Shown: piece after piece, positions 46,951 through 57,775 of the stretch
Position numbering within the stretch: the stretch's first letter is position 1
How the letters are laid out: every line of letters begins with the position of its first letter
Origin: Fonticula alba ATCC 38817
Taxonomy: Eukaryota; Protista; Nucleariida
Assembly (NCBI GenBank): GCA_000388065.2
Contig: KB932202.1
DNA length: 64,000 nt
Direction: 5' to 3' (one strand)
Made by a program: the position numbers and the translations under genes
The notes under the pieces: generated by a model
Seen by the model: only the letters and a program-made list of their open reading frames with translations
What the model was told of the DNA's origin: nothing
Database searches by the model: none

Positions 46951-48610
46951 AAGGGGCGGGGGAGAAGCACATCAGCAAAGATCCTCGCCGAGTCAGACCG
47001 AGGCAATGACCTCCGGCAACCCCCCTCCCCCCCCCACGCGGCAGACAGACATACGCAGGCAGGCGCCTGCGGGAGGTGGAGGCAAGGAAAGGGGGGAAGA
47101 GCGACGCACCTCAATGTCCGCCACCGGGGTCACCTCCGGAGACCGGAACAGCTCGCGGACCTCCTTGTAGGGCCAGTTCTCCGGGACGGTGTACCTCTTG
47201 GGGTCCAGATTCTCCAGGATGGTCTCGATGTTGCGGTGCTTGCGGATGAATTCCAGGGCACGCTTGGGGCCGACGCCGCGGATGGTGTCGCAGAAGTCAC
47301 ACCCCAGCAGGATGCACAGGTCGATGAACTCGTCCATCGTGAGTTCCAGCAGCTCCAGCACCCGGGGGAGGGAGTACTCGGCGATCGGCACCTTGCGCGC
47401 CTCGCTGTATGTCAGATGCCGGAGCAGGATGGTCGACCCGCACGTCAGCGAGTCCATATCCTCGGAGGCGGTGGCATACACCAGCCCTTTGGCGGCCATG
47501 ACGGCGCACTGGGCCTCTGCCTCGCAGGGGGCCTCGATGTAGGGGATGCCCATGAGCGTGAGCAGGCGCTTGCACTCGGCCGTGTGCTCGGCCGTGACGC
47601 GCACCGTCCGCCGGGAGAACTTGTCCATGTCCGCCTGGTTGCCTGGGGACGGGGCAGGATGGATAGGGGCCGGGGGCGGGGGGGGCAGGGGGGGTCGTAG
47701 CCCGGCGGGGAGCAGCGAAAAGGCGAGCGGTCAGTGTGCGGGGACGTTTGCGCGGTGTGTCGGGGCCTGGCATGGACCGGGCCCCTTGCGCGCATATCGC
47801 TGCTCGTGCGCATGGCCGGCTCCTTGCCGGGCCCTCGGCGACACGTACCCTGCTCAGTGGCCGTCTTCAGGCTCTCTTCGGCCTGCTGGCGGCGCTCCGA
47901 GCGTTTGGACAGCTCGCCGCCCTTGAGGGCCGGCGGCTTGCCATCGAACACGTACACGGGCTTGATGCCGTTCTCGACCATGCGTGCCGTGCGGTAAAGC
48001 ATGCCCATGAGGTGGCTGCCGGTGGGGCGGGTGCGGGGGGCGGGGNNNNNNNNNNNNNNNNNNNNNNNNNNNNNNNNNNNNNNNNNNNNNNNNNNNNNNN
48101 NNNNNNNNNNNNNNNNNNNNNNNNNNNNNNNNNNNNNNNNNNNNNNNNNNNNNNNNNNNNNNNNNNNNNNNNNNNNNNNNNNNNNNNNNNNNNNNNNNNN
48201 NNNNNNNNNNNNNNNNNNNNNNNNNNNNNNNNNNNNNNNNNNNNNNNNNNNNNNNNNNNNNNNNNNNNNNNNNNNNNNNNNNNNNNNNNNNCGGGGCTCC
48301 GGAGCAAAGGAGAGAGGGGGGGGGGGGGGGGGAGACCGCCTGGGGAAATCGGAGGGCCAACGCCCGACAGAAGAGGCGGGGAGGGAAAGACAAGAAAGCG
48401 GGCGGGCGCTCGGCCGGCGCACCTGGTGACCTGGCCCGAGTCATTGGTCAGCACACCGCCGTCGGCCTGGCGCACGGCGATCAGGAACTGGTAGATGGAC
48501 ATCGACGCGTCGATGGCGATCTTCCGGCCGAACAGATGCTTGATCTCCATGTGCCGGACCGCCGTGCCGGCGACGTCGGCAATCAGCTGCGAGAGGCCGC
48601 GGATACCCAT
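46418..48610 (-). CDS. FEN1: Flap endonuclease 1, multi-exon (an N gap lies in intron 1)
   Basis: [12 protein letters not shown]...[96 protein letters not shown], and C-terminal PIP box QSRLDGFF. Confidence 0.96.
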
Positions 48611-49245: not shown

Positions 49246-49721
49246 ACATGCGCCTCGGACGGAGGTGGCCGGCGTACGCCCGGATGTCCGGATGCGGTGT
49301 TCCCGCGCAATCTCGGCCAGCCCGCCGGCCCGCACCCCAGGCAACTGCCAGACACCCCAAGGGGCCCCCGCCTGCCTGGCATGCTTGCCCGGCCCCGAGG
49401 CCAGCGCTTCCCTCCTCCCACTTGTCCCCCCGTTCGCCTCCCTTTGCTCGTGTCTCGCCTTACCTCGGTCCCTGCGTCGGGCCTCTCTGCTGGTGTCGGG
49501 TCCGTCGCACCACAGGTTGGGCCACCTCACCACGCCTCCCCCTCCAACTGCAAACACACGCACACACGCACACNNNNNNNNNNNNNNNNNNNNNNNNNNN
49601 NNNNNNNNNNNNNNNNNNNNNNNNNNNNNNNNNNNNNNNNNNNNNNNNNNNNNNNNNNNCACACACACACGCGCACACACACACGCCCTCCCCCTCATCC
49701 CCGCCCCGCCACATCTCCACA

Positions 49722-52700
49722 ATGCCTGGAGGCTGGTGGCCGGGCGAGGCCGACCCGGGCATCGAGCTACGCACAGTGTCACCGCCGCCCAGGCCGGAAG
49801 TCCGCGACGTGGACGACGGGGAGACTTCCGACACGCCGGCCGAGGCGGCGGATCCGTGCGACAGCCGGCCCACCGAGCACCACGGCCCGAGCATTCCCCC
49901 AACAGACCCGGCCCCCCGGGGGATCCTCAAGCGCGCGGCGCCCGGGTCGCTGGCCTCCTCGGAGGGCCTCCCCTGGGCCGGGCCCGGGATGCCGGCGTTC
50001 GCGGCCGAGTCGCACGGCTCGCACGGGGACCCGCATGGGAACCGGCCCAGGGACCGGCAGGGCGATCGCCAGGGCAGCCTCGCCAGCGCCTCCAGCGACC
50101 ATGTGGCCGGGGCATCGAGCGAGGCGGTGGCCAGCGCGTCGAGTGGCACGCTGGCCGGCGGCCGGCCGGCCGGGCTGGACCACCGCATCGCCTCCATCTT
50201 CACCTGGGTGGCGGACACCTTCAGCCTGCATGACTTCATCGAGATCGAGCATGTCCCGGTGGAGGATTTCCCCTTCGCGGGGCTGGCGGCCGCCGGGTCC
50301 AGCTCCGGGTCCGAATCCGGCTGGGCCCCGGGGCCGCAGTCGCCGGCCAGCGAGGTCGACGCGTATGCCCGGTCGCCGGGGCATGTGGCCCCGGTGCCCG
50401 GGGACCTCCGCCGGGGGTCCATGCAGCAGCCGCCGCGGCCGCCGCTGGCCGCCGGCCGTGCGGCGGCCCACCACAACCGGCGGTCCTCCACCCCCTCGAC
50501 GGTGCCGCACCTGGAGGGCCGGCGGTACTCGCTGTCGGCCGGGGGCCGGCATGACCGCCAGGCCCCGGGGCCCGGGGCCACGATGGTGGTGGCCGGGCCG
50601 CCGGCCACGCCGGACCGCTCGACCTCGCCGGCCCCCGGGCTGACGGTCCTCTCGGCCACGGCCCCGGGCGGGCGTCTTGCCACCGCCGGCAGCCTGCTGG
50701 CCGGGCCGGCCAGCGGGGTGGCCGCCCCCGGGCCGCTGCTCACGGTGCGGCCCTACTCCCCGGTGCGTGTGCAGCGGGCCGGCCCGCGGCATGCGCCCTT
50801 CATCGGCGAGGCGGAGTTCCGCATGCCGTCGACATTGGCCCCACTGGCCCGGCCGGCCCTCAGTGCCAGTGTCCTGTCCATGGCCGGTGGCGAGGGGGCC
50901 TCCCCGCCGCCGGGGGCCTATTGGCCGGGGGGGTCCCCGTCACCGAGGCCGGCGCCGGCGGATGGCGGCCCGTCGGCCCTGGGCATGGGCCACGGGTCGG
51001 CGGTTTCCTCGCCAGCATTGTCGCCGTCCTCATCGAGCCCGGGCGCGGTGTGCTCCTCGGCCTCCTCCTGCTCTTCCTCGGCCTCGGCCTCCTCCTCCTC
51101 CTCCTCCTCCTCCTCCTCCTCCTCCTCCTCCTCCTCGGCCTTGGGCTCCCTGCCGAGCCCATCGTCGATGGAGGCCTCTTCCGCGGGGTCCGGCCGGTCG
51201 GCCTGGGCGTCGGGCGAGCTGCACCCGGCGCCGGGGGTCCCGCTGCCGGCGGCCACCCGGCCGCGCATCCGCATCCGCCTGAGCCGGCGCCCGGAGGGGG
51301 ACCTGGCCGATCCGTACCTCCGGCCGCCGACCGTGCATGGGCCCGGGTCCGCGGCCCACGGGCCGACCTCCGGCGTCCGGGCCCTGCGGTCCAGCCACCT
51401 TCGCTTGGCCAGTCGGTCGGGGTCCTACGCCGGGTCGTGCGACTCGGCGGTCCTGGTGGTGACGCCGGTGGACCTGTTCTTCCTCGGGCGCAAGTGGCAG
51501 TCCCCCGGGGACAAGCGCCGGGAGCGGCGTCTCGTCCGGCAGCTGGACACGTCGCGCCCGGCGCGACTCGTCGCCCGGCCGGGCCAGGCCACCCCGGCCG
51601 CCGTCGACACCACCCCCCCGGATGTGACGCGCGACCTGGCGGACGGGTTGCCGGCCGTGCCGAGCCTGGCCGCCACCCCTGGCGGGCCTGCCGACCGGGT
51701 TCCCTCCCTGGCGGCGGATGCCGCCCCCTTGCCCGGGCCTGCTGCCACCATTACGGCGATCCCGGTGGCCGATCGGCGGGGGTTCTCCGCCGGCGCCGGC
51801 GGCTTGACCATCCACACGGCCGGGTCGCCGAGCACCGCCGGCCCGGCCAGCCCCCTGGCCATGCGCACGCTCACCGGCACGACCACCTCGGCCGACTCGG
51901 CCCCGGTGTCGCCGGTCAACCCGGACATTGACATCGCCTCCTTTTTCGGCACCTGGAGCCCGGGGGACCTGGACCCCGATGAGGAAGAGGAGGAGGAGGA
52001 GGACGACGACGACGAGGAAGACGACGAGGAGGATGACGAGGAGGACGGCGAGGAGGATGACGCTGACCCGAGCGGCCCCCTGGGCGCCGGGAGCATCACA
52101 CCCCCGACCGATGGCGGCTCCACCTCACTTGCCTCGCCCTCGTCGGCCCCGCAGTCGGCGGCCGAGCAGGGCGCCGGGGTGGTCGCCGCCCCGCCGCCAG
52201 CTGCATTGCGCGTGCGCTCTCCCCGCCTGGCTCCCGCCCGGACGCGGTGCGTTCTCTTGCTGCTCCCTGCTGCTCCCTGCTGCTCCCTGCTGCTCCCTGC
52301 TGCTCCCTCTCTCCCGCCGCCGCGCGCGTGAGCGCCTGCACACACGCCTGCACACATATCCTCACATATCCTCACATCTACACCCACACCCCCAAATGCG
52401 CACGTCCATGCTCACCTTCGCACCTCCTCGGGACGCGGCATGCCGCCACGACAGGGTGAGCCATCCGCAGTTTGCGGCCGGGCCATTGCCCGGCGGCCCG
52501 ACGGACCGGCCGGCACCGAGCCTGGTGGCCGGGGCCCGCGCGGCGGCGCTACTCGGCGCCCGGCGATCCTCCTGGGCGCCCGTGCTGCTGGACATGAATG
52601 CGCGCAATGCCCGCGGGGGCATTCACAACAAGGATTCCTGGGCACCACGGGCGGCCGGCGGGGGCCCGGTTACGGCGGCCCCGGCGCCGGGCTTCGGCCC

Positions 52701-54166
52701 GAATGACCTGGCCGCCTCGTCGTCGCGCGGGGGCCTCGCCTCGTCGGGCGGGCCTTCGCCCCAGCCCGGCGGGCTGGCGGGGTCCGTGGGCGACGGCCCG
52801 GCCGGGCCCGGGCTGCTGGACGCCAGCTCCTCGGGGGATGCCCTGCCGGGGCCCGGGTCCGGGGGTCCTTCGCCCAGTCGGTTTTCCTGGCGCGGGCGTC
52901 CGGCATCGATGGTCGGGCGCCCGGTCGAGGGGGCGGACGCCCAGCGGCCCGGTCGGGGGACCGGCGGCCCGGCCTCCGCCGGCACGGTGCCCGGCCCCGG
53001 GCGAGCCGCCCTCGGGCCGACCCGGCGGCGGTCCACCATCACGTCGGTCTTTCGCCGGCCGCGCACGCGCTCCGGCTCGGACTCCGACCAGTCGGTGGAT
53101 GTGGGTGCTTCTGGCGACCTGCGATCCTGGCATGCCTCCTCGTCGCCCTCGCCGAGCGGGTCCTTCGGGTCTTCCTCCGGGGCGTCGGCCGTGGAGGATG
53201 CCGAGGGGGCCGGGCTCCGGGTGCGGCCGAGCTCCCCGCCGCCGCCGCCGGCGCCGCCGCCGCCGGCGGGCCCGGAGGCGGCCGACTTGCCCGAAGCCTC
53301 GGCCCCGGATGCGGCGCCCGGCATGGGGCTCGCCCCCGGGGCCGGTGCCGTGGCCGGCGTGGCGGCGATCACCATGGCCGAGGGCACGGCCGCGACACCC
53401 GCCCTGCAGGCGGCCGCCTCCCCGGGGCCGGCCGGGCCCGTTGTGGTGGTGGCCCCGAGCGCCGACCCGGGCCGGGTCGATGGCATCGGCGCCACGGTGG
53501 CCGGGCCCCCCTCCCCGAGCCAGGCTCCCGGGGCCCTCCGACGGAATACCTACTCCACGTCGGCCCCGTCGTCGGGGCTGTCCTCGGCGAGCCTCTCGCT
53601 GCCGGGGTTCCGCCGGCAGCGCTCCGACCAGTCGGTGGCTTCCTCCATGGCCGAGGGGCCGGCGTCGTCCGGCCGGCGGCCCGGCACCCGGCGGCGCTCC
53701 CAAGCCAAGGACATGTCCCCCTCCAGCCGGCCGTCCATCGCGGCCGTGGTCATTTGGGTGAATGCCCTGCTGATCACCATCGGCGTGGCGGTCATCGTCA
53801 CCGTGGCCCTGGTCGGCTCCAGCCGGTACATGCTCGCATGCCTCGCTCTCTTTGCACCGGCCACCGGCCGCTCCCCCTTCCCAGCTAACCCGCCTCGCCG
53901 GTCGCGCCGCAGCGAGACCACCTCCACCATCCGCTCGCTGGCCAACCAGCTGGCCAGCCGGGCCCAGATCAATCTGGACCTGGCGCTTGACAATGCCGAG
54001 GCCCTGAGCTCCGTGCACTTGCCCTACTTCCTGCACTTTGGCCACACGCCGGCCGACTGCCAGCGTGCCTCGCGACCGCTGCTCTACTCCATGCAGCATG
54101 AGTCCCTGCTGGTCAGCATGGTCCACCTGTCGGACGGGCTGGTGCGTGCATGGGTCTCCCGTCGTG

Positions 54167-54197
<31 letters not shown>

Positions 54198-56955
54198 TGT
54201 AGCCCCTCTCTCCGTGCCCCTTTCTTCGCTTTCTCTTTGCCGCCCTCCCGGCCGCCATCGCTCCGCCCACCTTCCCCTCACCAGCCCCACACCGATGATC
54301 ACATCTGCCCCCCCCCCCCCTCCTTTCTCCCTGCGGCTGGGCGGCCCGGCTGCCGCAGGGGAGTTTCTGCGGCGCCTCGCGCGCTGGCACCTCGCCCAAA
54401 GACGACCTCGGGGTCCGAGTCACCCGCATGCAGCCTCCGGCCGGGGACCCCACCGGCCCGGCCACCATGCAGCTGCAGGAGTTCCTCCACCATCCGGAAG
54501 CGTGCTCCCTGTCGGACTTCTCCTGCCCGGTGTTCGACTACCCGCCGCCGCTCGGGCGGGGCCCGGAGTTCTCCCGCTCGTATGACCCCCGCACGCGGAG
54601 CTGGTTTCAGGCGGTACGCCGGCTGGCCCTTCCCGAAGGGCTTTCCTGCTGGCTTTTGCCCTCTGCCTCTCGCGGTTGACTGACACCCGATGCCCCCCCC
54701 CCCCCTCCCTCCTGTGCGCATCTGCCCGCCAGGCTGCCGCCACCACCGGGCCCGTGTGGTCGGATATCTACCTCTACTCGTCGTACCACCGCCTGGGATT
54801 CACGGTTCGTGGCTACTGTGTTGGGGTCCTCCCCTGCTGCTCCCTCTCTTCCTCCCTCTCTCTCTCTCTCTCTCTCTCCCTCTCCCCCGTCTCAGCTCAT
54901 CCCCTGCCGACACCGGGACTCACCCATCACCGGGTCTCGCCCACCACCGGCCCCGGGCTGCCTGCCGGACGCACACGCTAGACCGCCCTCCGGGCGGTGC
55001 CCCTCGACAGTGCGGCACCCAGGCCGGCCAATCACCCGGTCATCATGTCGACGGACGTTTCGCTGGCCGAGTTGTCCACCTCCCTGCGCAAGCTCCTGAC
55101 CGAGGTCCAAAGCCAAGGGGACATGGCCTCCTTGGGGGTCGTGTCGAATGGCGCACACCTGACCCGACGCTCGGCCCTGACCCGGATGGCCGATGCGCTA
55201 GACCGGCTGTGGCCTGGCCGTCGGGCCGGCGCTGCCACCGCCTCGCCCACAACCGGGGATCTCGGCGCGCCGACACTCTTGCTCCTGGATGCGAAGGGCT
55301 TCCTGGTCGGGGTGGCCTTGAGCGAGAGCCACCTCGAGAGCGCGGTCTCCGGATCGGGCTCCGGCGAGCAGGTAAAGCTGGTCAAGACCCCGGCCGAAGG
55401 TGCGTGTTTTTTCCTCTCCCTCTCTCTCTTTTTCTCTGTTTCTCTTTTTCTCTGTTTCTCTGTTTCTCTCTTTCTCTGTTTCTCTCTTTCTTTCTCTCCC
55501 TCCCTCCATCTCCCTCCCTCCATCTCCCTCCCTCCATCTCTCTCCCTCTCCCTCTCTCCCTTTTCTTCTCCCTTTCCACGGCGTGTGCGTGCGTGTGTCT
55601 CGACCGCCATACTCACCCCGCTGCTTGGCCCTCCCCATGGACAGGCTGCACGCACACTTGCTCGGTTCGTGACTGTTGCATGGTGCACTCGCAGGACAGC
55701 GACAATGCGCACATTCGCCTGATTGCGTCGTACCTGGTCGCCCGTGGTGTCATCCCCCCGGCGCCGACCGGCGCCCTGTCTGTGCCCGGCGCCCCGGATG
55801 CCGCTGCCAACGATGTCTCCTCCTCGCGGACCAGCCGTGTGACCTACTTCGAACCGGACGACCGGGTGCGTGCGCCGCGGCCCTGTCGCCTCTGTGGGCT
55901 TGCCATGCCGACATGCCTTCTCCTTTGGCCCCCCTGCTGACCCTGATGCGCCCGCCGGCACATGGACCTGCAGCTGTCCATCGCCCACCTGCAGTATCAC
56001 CGCGGCTCGAACCTCCGGTGGCGCATCGTGGCGGCCTTCGACCGGCAGCAGCTGACCCTGGCCCTGGCCCGGCGCTATGGCACCATCGTCTCGGTGGTGG
56101 CGGTGCTGCTGCTGCTGCTGTCGGTCTTCTTGTCGATCCTGCTGAATCGCTTCCTGACCAAGTGCGTCGCATGCCGCCGCATCTCTTTGTCTCTCCCTTT
56201 CCCTCTCTCTGTGTGTGTCTCTCCTCCCACCCAGACGACTGCGAGGCTCACCATCCCGCTTTCCCCTCCCTCCCTCCCTCCCTCCCCCCGCACGGCCAGC
56301 CCCCTGCTGGCGGTGATCCGGCACCTAGAGGAGGTGGCCGCATTGCAGGAAAGCCCGCAGGTGGTCAAGCGGCGCTTCCGCCGGTTCTCCTTCTTCCCCA
56401 CCTTCCGGTCGCTGTTCTCCTCCTCCGAGAAGATAGACGTGTCGCCCTCTGACGCCAGCCTCGCCACCGTTGGTCAGCCACGCCGGGCAGGCGGCTCCTC
56501 GTCACTGGTATCCTCCAGCCGGCTGGAGATCGAGGAGGTCAATGAGATCCGCGACGGTGCGTGCATTCGCTTCGCCACGCCACGCCTCGGCGGCCGCGTC
56601 CGTTGTTTTCTGCCCTGGGCGCGGGACATCGCCTCCGCGCTCCTCGCAGCTGTTGCCGCCGACTGACGCTCCGTGCCCCGACAAACTGCCGGCCGCTCTC
56701 TGCCTTTGGGGGGGGGGGGGGGTCTCGCCCGGCGGACAGCCCTCCTGTCCTTGCGCGTCGGGTTGATTTCCTTCCTTCGGTATGCCCCGCGGCAGGTGGT
56801 CACGCTGTTGGTCCGGGAAAACCGCCGGCCCATCCTCGGCGTCGATCCCACCGAGGTGACGGTCATGTTCTCGGACATCGCCAACTTCGCCGACCTGACG
56901 CAGGCCTTCGATGATGCCCATGTGGTGGAGCTTCTCCAGTGCGTGTGCACACACC

Positions 56956-56991
<36 letters not shown>

Positions 56992-57775
56992 CACCTCGGG
57001 CTGCTTTTCGCCGGTGCCGCTCGCAACCCCTCACGCTGACACGCCCCCCCCCCCCGCCGCGCCCCTGGCCAGGCGCTACCTCTCCTCCACCATGAGCGTG
57101 GTCGTGGCCAATGAGGGGCTCATCGACAAGTTCATGACCGACGCGCTGATGGCCTTCTGGAATGCCCCGGAGCCGTATCCCTACCCGGATGGGCATGCGG
57201 CGGCCGCCTGCCGCGCCGCCCTCGAGGCCCTGAGCAAGATGGAGGCCGCCCGGGCCGACTGGGCGCTGGCCGGCCTGCCGCATGTGCAGGCGCGCTTCGG
57301 CCTGCACACCGGCATCTGCCTGGTGGGCAATCTCGGCTCGCGGAATCGGCTGAGCTTCACATGCATCGGGGACAATGTGAATCTGGCGTCCCGGCTGGAG
57401 GGCCTCAACCGGGTGTACGGCACATCCATCGTCCTGTCCGGGGCCACTCGGGCCCAAGTGCAGGGGTCCTTCGTGACTCGGGTGCTGGATAATGTCACGG
57501 TCAAGGGCAAGGCCCAGCCGGTGACCGTGTGCGAGCTGATCGGCCACAATGACGTGGTCAGTGCCAATGTGGCGGCCAGCATGCGCTCCTTCGACCAGGC
57601 CCTTCAGCTGATGACCCAGCGGCGCTTCGCCCAGGCGGCCGTCTTGCTGGAGGCCTTCCAGGCCCAGTACCCGGGGGATTTGGCCTGCCAGGAGCACCTG
57701 GCCCTGGCCCGGCGCCTGGCCGCCGACCCGCCCCCCGACGAGTGGGTCTTCCTCCGGAAGATGGACACCAAGTAG
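49722..57775 (+). CDS. Receptor-type class III nucleotidyl (probably adenylyl) cyclase: disordered N-terminus - TM - Cache-like sensor - TM - HAMP-like - cyclase - TPR-like tail; multi-exon
   Basis: Cyclase core VTVMFSDIANF...LIDKFMTDALMAFWNAP...RFGLHTGICLVGNLGSRNRLSFTCIGDNVNLASRLEGLNRVYGTSIVLS...VKGKAQPVTVCEL. Two hydrophobic spans (about 53739-53825 and 56085-56145). Cache-like YDPRTRSWF (54581), GPVWSDIY and MSTDVSLAELS. Exon 1 joins exon 2 in phase 0 across intron 52212-52470. Confidence 0.85.

What the first reader, a model, noticed from the sequence alone, without database searches (positions are those of the whole stretch)
49722..57775. Bacterial-type Cache-HAMP-adenylyl cyclase-TPR receptor embedded as an intron-rich eukaryotic gene
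Seen: TM1, a sensor region with YDPRTRSWF / GPVWSDIY / STDVSLAELS, TM2, a HAMP-like linker (SPLLAVIRHLEEVA), a single class III cyclase domain (DKFMTDALMAFWNAP; GNLGSRNRLSFTCIGDNVNLASRLEGLN; VKGK) and a helical tail ending DPPPDEWVFLRKMDTK. Established: YDPRxRPWY is typical of dCache domains. The AFWxAP / GNxGS.R..YT.IGD.VN.ASRLEGLN core with a TPR-like PP..W....K tail is typical of bacterial membrane-anchored homodimeric cyclases, not animal 12-TM or fungal Cyr1 enzymes. Both metal-binding Asp residues and the N...R pair are present, and Lys in DKF with Thr in SFT suggests ATP use. Inference: a horizontally acquired, then intronised, chemosensory cAMP receptor in a microbial eukaryote, possibly sensing prey or aggregation cues.
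Basis: partly seen in the sequence, partly recalled or inferred. Interest (0 to 1): 0.72.

Follow-up and report, generated by a model that had tools for sequence, protein, structure and literature searches.

The report
Amino-acid-type sensor fused to cAMP cyclase
This amoeba gene encodes a membrane receptor whose outer part looks like a bacterial amino-acid sensor and whose inner part makes cAMP. It is not a private bacterial import: it belongs to an old gene family shared with chytrid fungi and the single-celled relatives of animals.

Summary
On the + strand, 49722-57775, about 11 GT-AG exons in consistent phase encode five parts:
- a roughly 1,250-residue low-complexity cytosolic head;
- TM1, an extracellular sensor and TM2;
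- a HAMP-like linker;
- one class IIIb cyclase domain;
- a conserved three-helix tail.

Pfam finds the cyclase on its two exons. The closest solved structures are CyaB and CyaC. The sensor exons map in order onto a profile of the relatives' sensors, which are Pfam dCache_1 and closest to PctA-type amino-acid sensors. All five residues of the published amino-acid-binding motif are present.

The "recent horizontal transfer" reading is only partly supported. The nearest relatives form a clade of chytrids, an aphelid, Capsaspora and ichthyosporeans, and the careful tree puts this gene inside it (86/92). One intron matches two chytrids in position and phase.

Caveats:
- HAMP and TPR are not statistically confirmed.
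- A Gly found in all 55 aligned homologues, next to a metal-binding Asp, is Thr here.

It is a new member of a known kind. The scan had noted this same stretch in an overlapping window (s1-065555), not on other DNA.

The parts
49722..52246 (+). Exon 1: start of a long Ala/Ser/Pro/Gly-rich cytosolic N-terminal extension. The 3' border is one of three possible donors (52212, 52247 or 52328).
   Evidence: ATG at 49722. The frame is open to 52328. In-frame GC3 is 0.89-0.96. No Pfam family. Donor and acceptor options are listed. An N gap at 49574-49659 leaves the true 5' end open.
52455..53825 (+). Exon 2: the rest of the N-terminal extension, running without a stop into TM1 (53737-53817). The acceptor is at 52454 or 52470.
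   Evidence: Continuous ORF in this frame with GC3 0.85-0.93. RRx[S/T] motifs occur 5 times against 0.54 expected. TM1 maps to family profile columns 4-35.
53913..54141 (+). Exon B: first helix of the extracellular sensor.
   Evidence: GT-AG borders, 87-nt intron in phase. Weak match at the expected place, family sensor profile columns 40-76.
54359..54613 (+). Exon C: core of the membrane-distal sensor module, ending in SYDPRTRSWFQA. It carries the motif residues equivalent to PctA Y121 (54581-54583), R126 (54596-54598) and W128 (54602-54604).
   Evidence: Family sensor HMM hit, E 2e-9, columns 111-175, beginning at 54353. hhalign against A1 gives 91% probability, E 1e-6. GC3 is 0.84-0.92.
54733..54804 (+). 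Exon D (24 codons): GPVWSDIYLY, carrying the Y144 equivalent (54769-54771).
   Evidence: HMM columns 174-197, directly following exon C, E 7.5e-4. Phase-0 borders.
54982..55371 (+). Exon E: end of the distal module (VIMSTDVSLAELS, D173 equivalent at 55054-55056) and a divergent start of the membrane-proximal module.
   Evidence: HMM columns 212-235. hhalign places 20 columns at the right spot but weakly (E 0.013). The rest of the exon cannot be aligned.
55695..55865 (+). Exon F: divergent part of the membrane-proximal module.
   Evidence: GT-AG borders in phase 0 and GC3 0.81. No significant profile match.
55974..56161 (+). Exon G: last strands of the sensor (LRWRIVAAF) and TM2 (56082-56144).
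   Evidence: HMM columns 307-359, E 2.6e-7. hhalign E 4.9e-5. Best single-sequence hits are to members of the eukaryotic clade.
56300..56556 (+). Exon H: HAMP-like linker. It holds a first helix (NPLLAVIRHLEEVAALQ), a Ser-rich insert of about 55 residues, then the start of a second helix (EIEEVNEIRD).
   Evidence: Position after TM2 and the sequence pattern only. No Pfam HAMP hit. Family linker HMM E 0.38. The insert has GC3 0.86, so it is probably coding.
56740..56938 (+). [quoted passage not shown]
   Evidence: Pfam Guanylate_cyc E 3.5e-3, profile 8-35. Family HMM E 2.8e-19. Scores to the eukaryotic clade are far higher than to the other hits (median 36 vs 19 bits, p 1.4e-9).
57073..57775 (+). 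Exon J: the rest of the class IIIb cyclase domain and a three-helix tail ending in DPPPDEWVFLRKMDTK, then the stop. Key residues are Lys 57128-57130, the unusual Thr 57137-57139, second metal Asp 57140-57142, Thr 57359-57361, Asn 57380-57382 and Arg 57392-57394.
   Evidence: Pfam E 6.3e-9. PDB CyaB 5e-19 and CyaC 2e-17. AlphaFold2 model pLDDT 94, pTM 0.91, with helices 164-181, 185-198 and 203-217. Foldseek top hits are CyaB/CyaC over the cyclase part only. The intron before this exon (56939-57072, phase 2) is shared with chytrids.

Best explanation
This is one eukaryotic gene for a type of receptor adenylyl cyclase that is common in bacteria.

Shown here:
- A long disordered cytosolic head leads into TM1.
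- Between TM1 and TM2 lies an extracellular sensor of about 430 residues, homologous to the double-Cache (dCache_1) sensors of its relatives.
- TM2 is followed by a HAMP-like linker, a conserved transducer segment (SF.RY.P), a single class IIIb catalytic domain and a family-specific three-helix tail.
- The gene belongs to a clade of such receptors found in chytrids, an aphelid, Capsaspora and ichthyosporeans. It was therefore most likely inherited vertically within opisthokonts from an ancient gene of bacterial type.

Inferred from established knowledge of class III cyclases and dCache receptors:
- The protein works as a homodimer.
- A ligand binds the membrane-distal sensor module and displaces TM2.
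- The linker and transducer segment pass this on to the two catalytic domains, which form two symmetric ATP sites across the dimer interface and make cAMP.

All five residues of the published amino-acid-binding motif are kept (equivalents of PctA Y121, R126, W128, Y144 and D173), with the same spacing. The most likely ligand is therefore an L-amino acid or a close derivative such as GABA. The receptor would then couple extracellular amino acids (food or lysed prey) directly to cAMP.
For: Gene model:
- GT-AG borders and consistent phases, and GC3 periodicity in the exons.

Cyclase:
- Pfam hits on both cyclase exons.
- CyaB and CyaC are the best solved relatives, with Lys, Thr, Asn and Arg aligned.
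- The model has pLDDT 94, and Foldseek returns class III cyclases.
- The first metal Asp and the transducer segment align to the family.

Sensor:
- Exon matches fall in order along the family sensor HMM: columns 4-39, 35-73, 111-175, 172-198, 212-235 and 307-359.
- hhalign against the family alignment gives E 1e-6 for exon C and E 4.9e-5 for exon G.
- The family alignment A1 is Pfam dCache_1 in 31 of 36 members. Its best PDB matches are PctA, PctB, PctC and Mlp-type amino-acid sensors (E to 2.7e-27).
- The motif residues are seen, and are defined in PMC8915833. That paper also showed amino-acid binding by a Legionella dCache cyclase.

Ancestry:
- Named relatives are listed, and eukaryotic gene neighbours.
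- The opisthokont clade appears, and the careful tree gives 86/92.
- Trees that hold this gene with that clade are not rejected, and score 24 and 30 log-likelihood units above the free quick trees.
- Exons G, I and J each score higher against the eukaryotic clade (p 2.6e-4, 1.4e-9 and 6e-4).
- The phase-2 intron in the codon before R/E-Y-L is shared with Fimicolochytrium and Nowakowskiella.
- 146 of 150 relatives end with the same tail.
Against: - The splicing, the start codon and the unity of the transcript are all inferred.
- The spliced protein was never joined, so there is no Pfam Cache or HAMP hit and no fold for the sensor of this gene. Single exons give no Cache or HAMP hit.
- The membrane-proximal half of the sensor (late exon E and exon F) cannot be aligned.
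- The Gly before the second metal Asp, invariant in all 55 aligned homologues, is Thr here, which could weaken catalysis.
- PctA Y129 is Phe here.
- Exon J sits on a long branch. Quick trees leave it unresolved or pair it with a planctomycete-like bacterial protein.
- Support for the opisthokont placement is moderate, not strong.
- The sensor motif YDPR.R.W looks more like the bacterial consensus than like the ichthyosporean or chytrid versions.
- One shared intron could be coincidence (roughly 1-2% by simple counting, more if proto-splice sites are favoured).
Confidence: 0.68

Rival explanations
1. Lineage-specific horizontal transfer. An ancestor of this amoeba took a dCache-HAMP-cyclase gene directly from a bacterium, independently of chytrids and ichthyosporeans, and the gene later gained introns and low-complexity inserts.
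For: - Quick trees leave exon J outside the eukaryotic clade, once paired with P0011 (SH-aLRT 91). P0011 lies among planctomycete-type genes.
- The highest identity over a shorter stretch is to a gammaproteobacterial CHASE2 cyclase (50% over 170 columns).
- The YDPRTRSWF motif matches the bacterial consensus better than the other eukaryotic versions do. Exon C scores no better to eukaryotes.
Against: - The careful search puts the gene inside the opisthokont clade (86/92).
- The constrained trees are better than the quick free trees, and p-AU is 0.80 and 0.87.
- Exons G, I and J score significantly higher to the eukaryotic clade.
- An intron of identical position and phase is shared with two chytrid orders.
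- A long N-terminal cytosolic extension is shared with the eukaryotic members (sensor starts at residue about 300-720 in them and about 1-20 in bacteria).
Confidence: 0.12
2. A real receptor that is not an amino-acid-gated adenylyl cyclase. Either the ligand is something else (another small molecule, or osmotic or ionic conditions as in Dictyostelium AcgA), or the catalytic domain is weakened and acts mainly as a scaffold or regulatory partner.
For: - A unique Thr replaces the invariant Gly next to the metal-binding Asp.
- Y129 is Phe.
- There is a 7-residue longer loop before the D173 equivalent, and the membrane-proximal module is divergent.
- Chytrid and metagenomic clade members have degenerate motifs (F for W128, M or K for R126). 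Amino-acid binding is therefore clearly not conserved across the clade.
- AcgA is an osmosensor (PMC5055082).
Against: - All five core motif residues, and the 14-residue spacing between the two motif halves, are intact.
- All six canonical catalytic residues are present, and only two positions deviate from columns that are at least 85% conserved.
- GC3 and the open frames argue for a gene under selection.
Confidence: 0.17
3. An artefact: two neighbouring genes (a sensor protein and a cyclase) wrongly read as one, a mis-assembly, or bacterial contamination.
For: There are no RNA reads. The window holds several N gaps. HAMP is not statistically supported.
Against: - The exons follow the same order as uninterrupted relatives, including transcriptome-derived proteins of Amoebidium and Sphaerothecum that carry the sensor and the cyclase in one chain.
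- There is no N gap between 49660 and 57775.
- Nine spliceosomal-type introns and eukaryotic codon periodicity exclude bacterial DNA.
- Exon G (end of sensor plus TM2) and exon I (transducer plus cyclase) flank exon H in the expected order.
Confidence: 0.03

Closest known systems
Bacterial dCache_1-HAMP-class III adenylyl cyclases of about 700 residues (for example P0006 from a Sandaracinaceae MAG and P0011, and the Legionella pneumophila dCache_1AA cyclase WP_154766400.1, shown to bind amino acids in PMC8915833)
   Same: - Same order of parts: TM1, dCache_1 with the YDPR.R.WY ... W...Y ... D..L..LS motif, TM2, HAMP, SF.KYVP transducer, Lys/Thr-type cyclase.
- The same C-terminal helical tail ending PPP.DW.
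- 40-47% identity over the 233 residues of exon J.
   Different: - The gene here is split by at least 10 introns.
- It carries a low-complexity N-terminal extension of about 1,250 residues and an insert of about 55 residues in the HAMP connector.
- It has a divergent membrane-proximal module.
- It has Thr instead of the invariant Gly before the second metal Asp.
The opisthokont clade of the same family. Members include chytrids (Fimicolochytrium P0013, Rhizophlyctis P0005, Nowakowskiella P0019 and others), Amoeboaphelidium P0181, Capsaspora P0198 and ichthyosporeans (Sphaeroforma P0070, Sphaerothecum P0004, Creolimax, Chromosphaera, Amoebidium). In the sources all are annotated only as hypothetical or 'guanylate cyclase domain' proteins.
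   Same: - Long cytosolic N-terminal extension before TM1, same sensor type and same tail.
- Placement of this gene inside the clade in the careful tree.
- The phase-2 intron before R/E-Y-L is shared with chytrids, and Sphaeroforma has one in the same codon at phase 1.
   Different: - This gene has the longest N-terminal extension and a long branch.
- It keeps a complete amino-acid motif, whereas chytrids and several metagenomic members have lost W128 or R126.
- The other intron positions are not shared.
The Naegleria 'bacterial-type adenylate cyclase' with a Cache domain, noted by Upadhyay et al. 2016 (PMC4822843)
   Same: It is the published precedent for a Cache sensor fused to a bacterial-type class III cyclase in a eukaryote.
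   Different: It was not compared here by sequence. That paper states that Cache in fungi is limited to histidine kinases, which the chytrid members found here contradict.
Eukaryotic dCache_1AA proteins: calcium-channel alpha2delta subunits and CACHD1 (PMC8915833)
   Same: They have the same amino-acid-binding motif. The A1 profile hits alpha2delta-1 and CACHD1 structures at E about 1e-13.
   Different: In those proteins a VWA domain is inserted in the Cache domain and there is no enzymatic output. Here there is no VWA hit, and the layout and output are of the bacterial kind.
Dictyostelium adenylyl cyclase G (AcgA)
   Same: It is a single-catalytic-domain receptor cyclase of a social amoeba, whose extracellular sensor directly controls cAMP synthesis (PMC5055082).
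   Different: AcgA senses osmolarity. Its sensor type was not examined here (my recollection is that it is a CHASE domain, which is a lead only). No sequence comparison was made.
Solved class IIIb catalytic domains: Pseudomonas aeruginosa CyaB (3r5g) and Spirulina CyaC (1wc0)
   Same: They are the best sequence and fold matches to exon J, with the Lys/Thr substrate pair and the Asn/Arg pair aligned.
   Different: Neither has the three-helix tail (about 165 of 233 residues aligned), and their sensor parts differ.

Membership tests
Class III nucleotide cyclase (Pfam PF00211) | Significant match to the catalytic-domain profile | tested here: met
   Exon J scores E 6.3e-9, 36 bits against a cut-off of 21.9, over profile 73-178. 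Exon I scores E 3.5e-3 over profile 8-35. Foldseek finds class III cyclases at probability 1.00.
Class III nucleotide cyclase (Pfam PF00211) | Two metal-binding Asp residues, and the transition-state Asn and Arg | tested here: met
   FSDI aligns with the family FFSDI. D23, N103 and R107 of exon J fall in invariant or nearly invariant columns and align to CyaB and CyaC.
Class III nucleotide cyclase (Pfam PF00211) | Conserved Gly directly before the second metal Asp (IGD) | tested here: not met
   It is Thr here (MTD) and Gly in all 55 aligned homologues. The effect on activity is unknown.
Class IIIb adenylyl cyclase | Substrate-specifying Lys paired with Thr (instead of Asp) | tested here: met
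   The K of DKF and the T of SFT align with the K and T of CyaC (DKF... / DFT...) and of CyaB. K19 and T96 are at least 90% conserved in A2. That these two residues define class IIIb is established knowledge, not tested here.
Class IIIb adenylyl cyclase | cAMP synthesis by a homodimer | not testable with these tools
   This needs an enzyme assay.
dCache_1 (Pfam PF02743) | Match of this sequence itself to the Pfam profile | tested here: inconclusive
   No hit on any single exon at E<=1.
dCache_1 (Pfam PF02743) | Homology to proteins that are dCache_1 | tested here: met
   Exon matches fall in order along a profile of the relatives' sensors. hhalign gives E 1e-6 and 4.9e-5. 31 of 36 profile members hit dCache_1, best E 2.7e-21. 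PctA and other solved dCache domains score down to E 2.7e-27.
dCache_1 (Pfam PF02743) | Extracytoplasmic position between two TM helices, with the second helix directly after the domain | tested here: met
   Hydrophobic stretches at 53737-53817 and 56082-56144 flank the sensor and align to the TM columns of the family.
dCache_1 (Pfam PF02743) | Double PDC fold | not tested
   It would need the joined ectodomain. The membrane-proximal half cannot be aligned by sequence.
dCache_1AA amino-acid sensor (Gumerov et al. 2022) | AA_motif residues Y121, R126, W128, Y144 and D173 (PctA numbering), with 13-17 residues between the two halves | tested here: met
   SYDPRTRSWF supplies Y, R and W. Fourteen residues later comes the Y of WSDIY, then the D of STDVSL. 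These align to PctA through the family profile, and the definition is read. Y129, which is outside the five, is Phe.
dCache_1AA amino-acid sensor (Gumerov et al. 2022) | Measured amino-acid binding | not testable with these tools
   This needs ITC or thermal shift on the ectodomain.
HAMP (Pfam PF00672) | Profile match, with two amphipathic helices joined by a connector of about 14 residues | tested here: inconclusive
   No Pfam hit, and the family linker HMM gives E 0.38 on exon H. The position after TM2, a Pro-led first helix and an EI...N second helix fit. However, the connector is about 55 residues longer, and the second helix is 3 residues longer than in relatives.
TPR | Profile match to a TPR family | tested here: not met
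   No TPR hit on exon J at E<=0.01; the only related signal is a weak NCBIfam YbgF hit, E 0.012. Seven of 56 relatives' tails hit TPR_2. The model shows three helices, which is TPR-like at most.

The most novel reading that the evidence does not exclude
Unicellular opisthokonts kept an ancestral, bacterial-style receptor in which an extracellular amino acid directly gates cAMP synthesis. It has no G protein and no VWA insert, and animals and higher fungi lost it. In this aggregative amoeba it would be the nutrient or prey sensor whose silence on starvation, or whose activation by secreted amino acids, sets the cAMP level that governs encystment or aggregation. The RRx[S/T]-rich N-terminal extension would give PKA feedback.
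Probability: 0.22. Interest if true: 0.75.

Novelty: new member of a known kind. Interest (0 to 1): 0.5.

Why it matters
Two published generalisations are too narrow. One is that fungi have Cache only in histidine kinases (PMC4822843). The other is that fungi lack dCache_1AA and that every eukaryotic dCache_1 protein carries a VWA insert (PMC8915833). A whole clade of bacterial-layout Cache cyclases exists in chytrids, aphelids, filastereans, ichthyosporeans and this amoeba.

The member described here keeps the full amino-acid motif. That gives a concrete, testable candidate for how an aggregative relative of fungi links extracellular nutrients to cAMP. This is the second messenger that runs aggregation and encystment in Dictyostelium.

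The conserved three-helix tail that ends 146 of 150 relatives has no solved structure and no described role.

Tried and rejected
- **Read evidence.** There is therefore no RNA evidence.
- **Single-exon searches.** Pfam and NCBIfam on single sensor or linker exons gave no Cache or HAMP hit. Exon C alone against PDB gave nothing.
- **Quick trees.** They left the gene unresolved or next to a bacterial protein. A careful search and AU tests superseded them.
- **Sphaeroforma introns.** Those near the C/D and D/E borders looked shared, but they are 10 and 8 nt away, so they are not shared.
- **Other loci.** The Capsaspora locus is not on record. Amoeboaphelidium and two metagenomic members have no introns. 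P0024, the nearest row in the careful tree, sits on an uninformative 5.8-kb contig.
- **This gene's own product.** No annotated protein of this gene appeared in either protein search.
- **N-terminal extension.** It has no Pfam family.
- **Papers.** Those on chytrid and Blastocladiella cyclases mention 'bacteria-like' cyclases but no Cache sensor. The GPCR survey of animal relatives concerns other Cache proteins.
- **Organism name.** Fonticula alba comes from earlier scan notes only and was not verified here.

Full report
**What is there.** The window is about 70% G+C and carries several N gaps. The exons are:
- 53913-54141
- 54359-54613
- 54733-54804
- 54982-55371
- 55695-55865
- 55974-56161
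- 56300-56556
- 56740-56938
- 57073-57775 (stop TAG at 57773-57775)

They are preceded by an open frame that runs without a stop from about 52455 into TM1 (53737-53817), and by a further open frame from the ATG at 49722 to about 52246. Third-codon G+C is 0.81-0.96 in all these pieces and 0.53-0.80 in the introns. So the long Ala/Ser/Pro/Gly-rich upstream part is coding, and its second half is physically continuous with TM1. The protein would have roughly 2,100 residues, about 1,250 of them in a cytosolic low-complexity head with no Pfam family. An N gap at 49574-49659 leaves the true 5' end open.

**Cyclase.** Pfam Guanylate_cyc matches both cyclase exons: exon I at profile 8-35 (E 3.5e-3) and exon J at profile 73-178 (E 6.3e-9). 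The best solved relatives are P. aeruginosa CyaB (5e-19) and Spirulina CyaC (2e-17). The Lys of DKF, the Thr of SFT, and the Asn and Arg of GDNVNLASRLE align to their counterparts. The first metal Asp (FSDI) and the SF.RY.P transducer segment align strongly to the family (E 2.8e-19). An AlphaFold2 model of exon J, built with 55 homologues, has pLDDT 94 and pTM 0.91. Foldseek returns CyaB, CyaC and other class III cyclases over about 165 residues. The Lys/Thr pair is the class IIIb signature and predicts ATP use; that is established knowledge, not a test made here. Only two positions depart from columns conserved at 85% or more. One is striking: Thr replaces a Gly that is invariant in all 55 homologues, directly before the second metal Asp.

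**Tail.** The last 70 residues form three confident helices. They match a family consensus ending PPP.DW.GV....K. In 146 of 150 relatives the protein ends within five residues of this point. No solved cyclase covers the tail. TPR profiles hit 7 of 56 relatives' tails but not this one. It is therefore TPR-like at most.

**Sensor.** No single exon hits a Cache profile. This is expected for a domain cut into six pieces. Instead I built a profile from the sensor regions of 66 relatives and searched the exon translations one by one.
- The matches fall in order along the 420-column profile: TM1 at 4-39, exon B at 35-73, exon C at 111-175 (E 2e-9), exon D at 172-198 (E 7.5e-4), exon E at 212-235, and exon G at 307-359 (E 2.6e-7).
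- hhalign against a 36-member alignment (A1) gives E 1e-6 for exon C and E 4.9e-5 for exon G. For exon E it gives a weak hit at the right place.
- A1 itself is dCache_1 in 31 of 36 members (best E 2.7e-21). Its best solved matches are the amino-acid chemoreceptor sensors PctA, PctB, PctC and Mlp24/37, followed by alpha2delta-1 and CACHD1.
- The profile match moves the start of exon C to 54359.
- The membrane-proximal half (late exon E and exon F) cannot be aligned.

**Ligand motif.** Gumerov et al. 2022 (PMC8915833) define the amino-acid-binding motif of dCache_1AA as Y121, R126 and W128 (contacting the carboxyl group) plus Y144 and D173 (contacting the amino group), with 13-17 residues between the halves. 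Through the profile alignment to PctA and the family alignments, this gene has all five. Y, R and W are in SYDPRTRSWF. Fourteen residues further on, across the phase-0 intron, comes the Y of WSDIY, and then the D of STDVSL. Y129 is Phe, and the loop before the Asp is 7 residues longer. Chytrid and several metagenomic members have lost W128 or R126, so the motif is not a mere family constant.

**Linker.** After TM2 the sequence reads NPLLAVIRHLEEVAALQ, then a Ser-rich insert of about 55 residues with coding-type GC3 (0.86), then EIEEVNEIRD/ALLSLRVGLISF. This has the position and pattern of a HAMP domain with an expanded connector. Neither Pfam nor the family linker profile (E 0.38) confirms it.

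**Relatives.** A full HMMER scan with exon J found 2,335 proteins at E<1e-30, typically about 700 residues long and 40-47% identical over the whole exon, tail included. Many are bacterial dCache_1-HAMP-cyclases or CHASE2-cyclases. Among the best hits are long eukaryotic proteins:
- ichthyosporeans: Amoebidium, Sphaerothecum, Chromosphaera, Sphaeroforma, Creolimax;
- Capsaspora;
- chytrids: Rhizophlyctis, Gaertneriomyces, Borealophlyctis, Fimicolochytrium, Nowakowskiella, Spizellomyces, Geranomyces, Thoreauomyces;
- Amoeboaphelidium;
- further off, Andalucia and dinoflagellates.

The chytrid genes lie between ordinary nuclear genes such as ribosomal protein L39, dynein and Aha1. Two intronless metagenomic members lie among eukaryotic genes such as Rpc31, Brr2-type helicase, Med6 and a mitochondrial carrier. 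In all these eukaryotic members the sensor starts 300-720 residues into the protein.

**Phylogeny.** In a 73-row tree of the exon J region, the Holozoa (Capsaspora plus ichthyosporeans) and the Holomycota (chytrids, the aphelid and metagenomic kin) form sister groups in one clade. Quick searches leave this gene's long branch unresolved or beside a bacterial protein. The careful search places it inside the 33-row opisthokont clade, with ultrafast bootstrap 86 and SH-aLRT 92; its position within the clade is unresolved. Holding it with that clade gives trees 24 and 30 log-likelihood units better than the quick free trees, with p-AU 0.80 and 0.87. Taken separately, exons G, I and J each score higher against the eukaryotic clade than against the other 131 hits (p 2.6e-4, 1.4e-9 and 6e-4). 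Exon C does not.

**Introns.** The intron 56939-57072 splits the codon (CA|G, phase 2) that precedes R-Y-L. The alignment is gap-free from FSDIANF to this point. In Fimicolochytrium and Nowakowskiella, an intron splits the corresponding codon (AG|T) in the same phase. Sphaeroforma has an intron in the same codon at phase 1. With 9 introns here and 3 in each chytrid over about 1,950 aligned nucleotides, an exact coincidence has a chance of roughly 1-2%. Two Sphaeroforma introns near other borders are 8 and 10 nt off and are not shared.

**Reading.** The gene is a eukaryotic member of the bacterial-type dCache_1 / HAMP-like / class IIIb receptor cyclases. It was most likely inherited within opisthokonts rather than imported recently. 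By analogy with its bacterial relatives, it should act as a homodimer in which ligand binding to the distal Cache module is passed through TM2 and the linker to two symmetric ATP sites. One such relative, the Legionella cyclase, binds amino acids. An amino acid is the best-supported ligand. Both the mechanism and the ligand are inferences.

**Compared with the literature.** Upadhyay et al. 2016 noted one Cache-bearing bacterial-type cyclase in Naegleria and stated that Cache in fungi is limited to histidine kinases. Gumerov et al. 2022 found no dCache_1AA in fungi and reported a VWA insert in all eukaryotic dCache_1 proteins. Papers on chytrid cyclases speak of bacteria-like or horizontally acquired adenylate cyclases without noting a Cache sensor. 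I found no paper in the held library describing this opisthokont clade.

**Limits.**
- No reads could be laid.
- I worked beside those places in all later searches. Two local scripts did touch them, and nothing from them is used.
- The spliced protein was never assembled, searched or folded. This is why Cache and HAMP membership of this very sequence remains indirect.
- The organism name (Fonticula alba) comes from earlier scan notes and was not checked here.

Noticed in passing
window 57137-57139: There is a Thr codon (ACC) where all 55 aligned homologues have Gly, directly before the second metal-binding Asp of the cyclase (MTD against IGD). It takes two base changes from a Gly codon, so it is unlikely to be a read error.
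   Followed up: partly
window 52471-53712 (and 49722-52246): The cytosolic N-terminal extension is enriched in RRx[S/T] motifs. The part next to TM1 has 5 against 0.54 expected (1 of 1000 shuffles), and the first part has 3 against 0.87. These are possible PKA/AGC-kinase sites, hinting at feedback on the receptor.
   Followed up: partly
window 57563-57772; alignment A2: A three-helix C-terminal module with consensus PPP.DW.GV....K ends 146 of 150 relatives, bacterial and eukaryotic alike. It has no Pfam family of its own in these scans, and no solved cyclase structure covers it.
   Followed up: partly
L004 12119-14482 and L008 4184-4312: In Amoeboaphelidium, an N1221/DUF3402 (Far11/STRIP-like) gene lies just downstream of the cyclase gene. 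The same kind of gene lies downstream in an unnamed 101-kb metagenome scaffold. The scaffold is therefore probably from an aphelid-like organism.
   Followed up: no
window 47867-48610 (-): This is the head of a FEN1-like flap endonuclease gene ([10 protein letters not shown]...), interrupted by the N gap 48046-48291. It diverges from the cyclase gene across a region of about 1.1 kb.
   Followed up: no
   Followed up: no
L002 1501-14065: The Sphaeroforma arctica homologue has 22 introns over 12.5 kb. One of its exons is a 26-codon micro-exon that nearly coincides with the 24-codon exon D here, but its borders are 10 and 8 nt away.
   Followed up: yes
proteins P0211, P0224, P0238, P0255: Dinoflagellate (Effrenium, Symbiodinium) and jakobid (Andalucia) records carry dCache_1-cyclases of the same family, outside the opisthokont clade. 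I did not check whether they are nuclear genes or bacterial contaminants.
   Followed up: no
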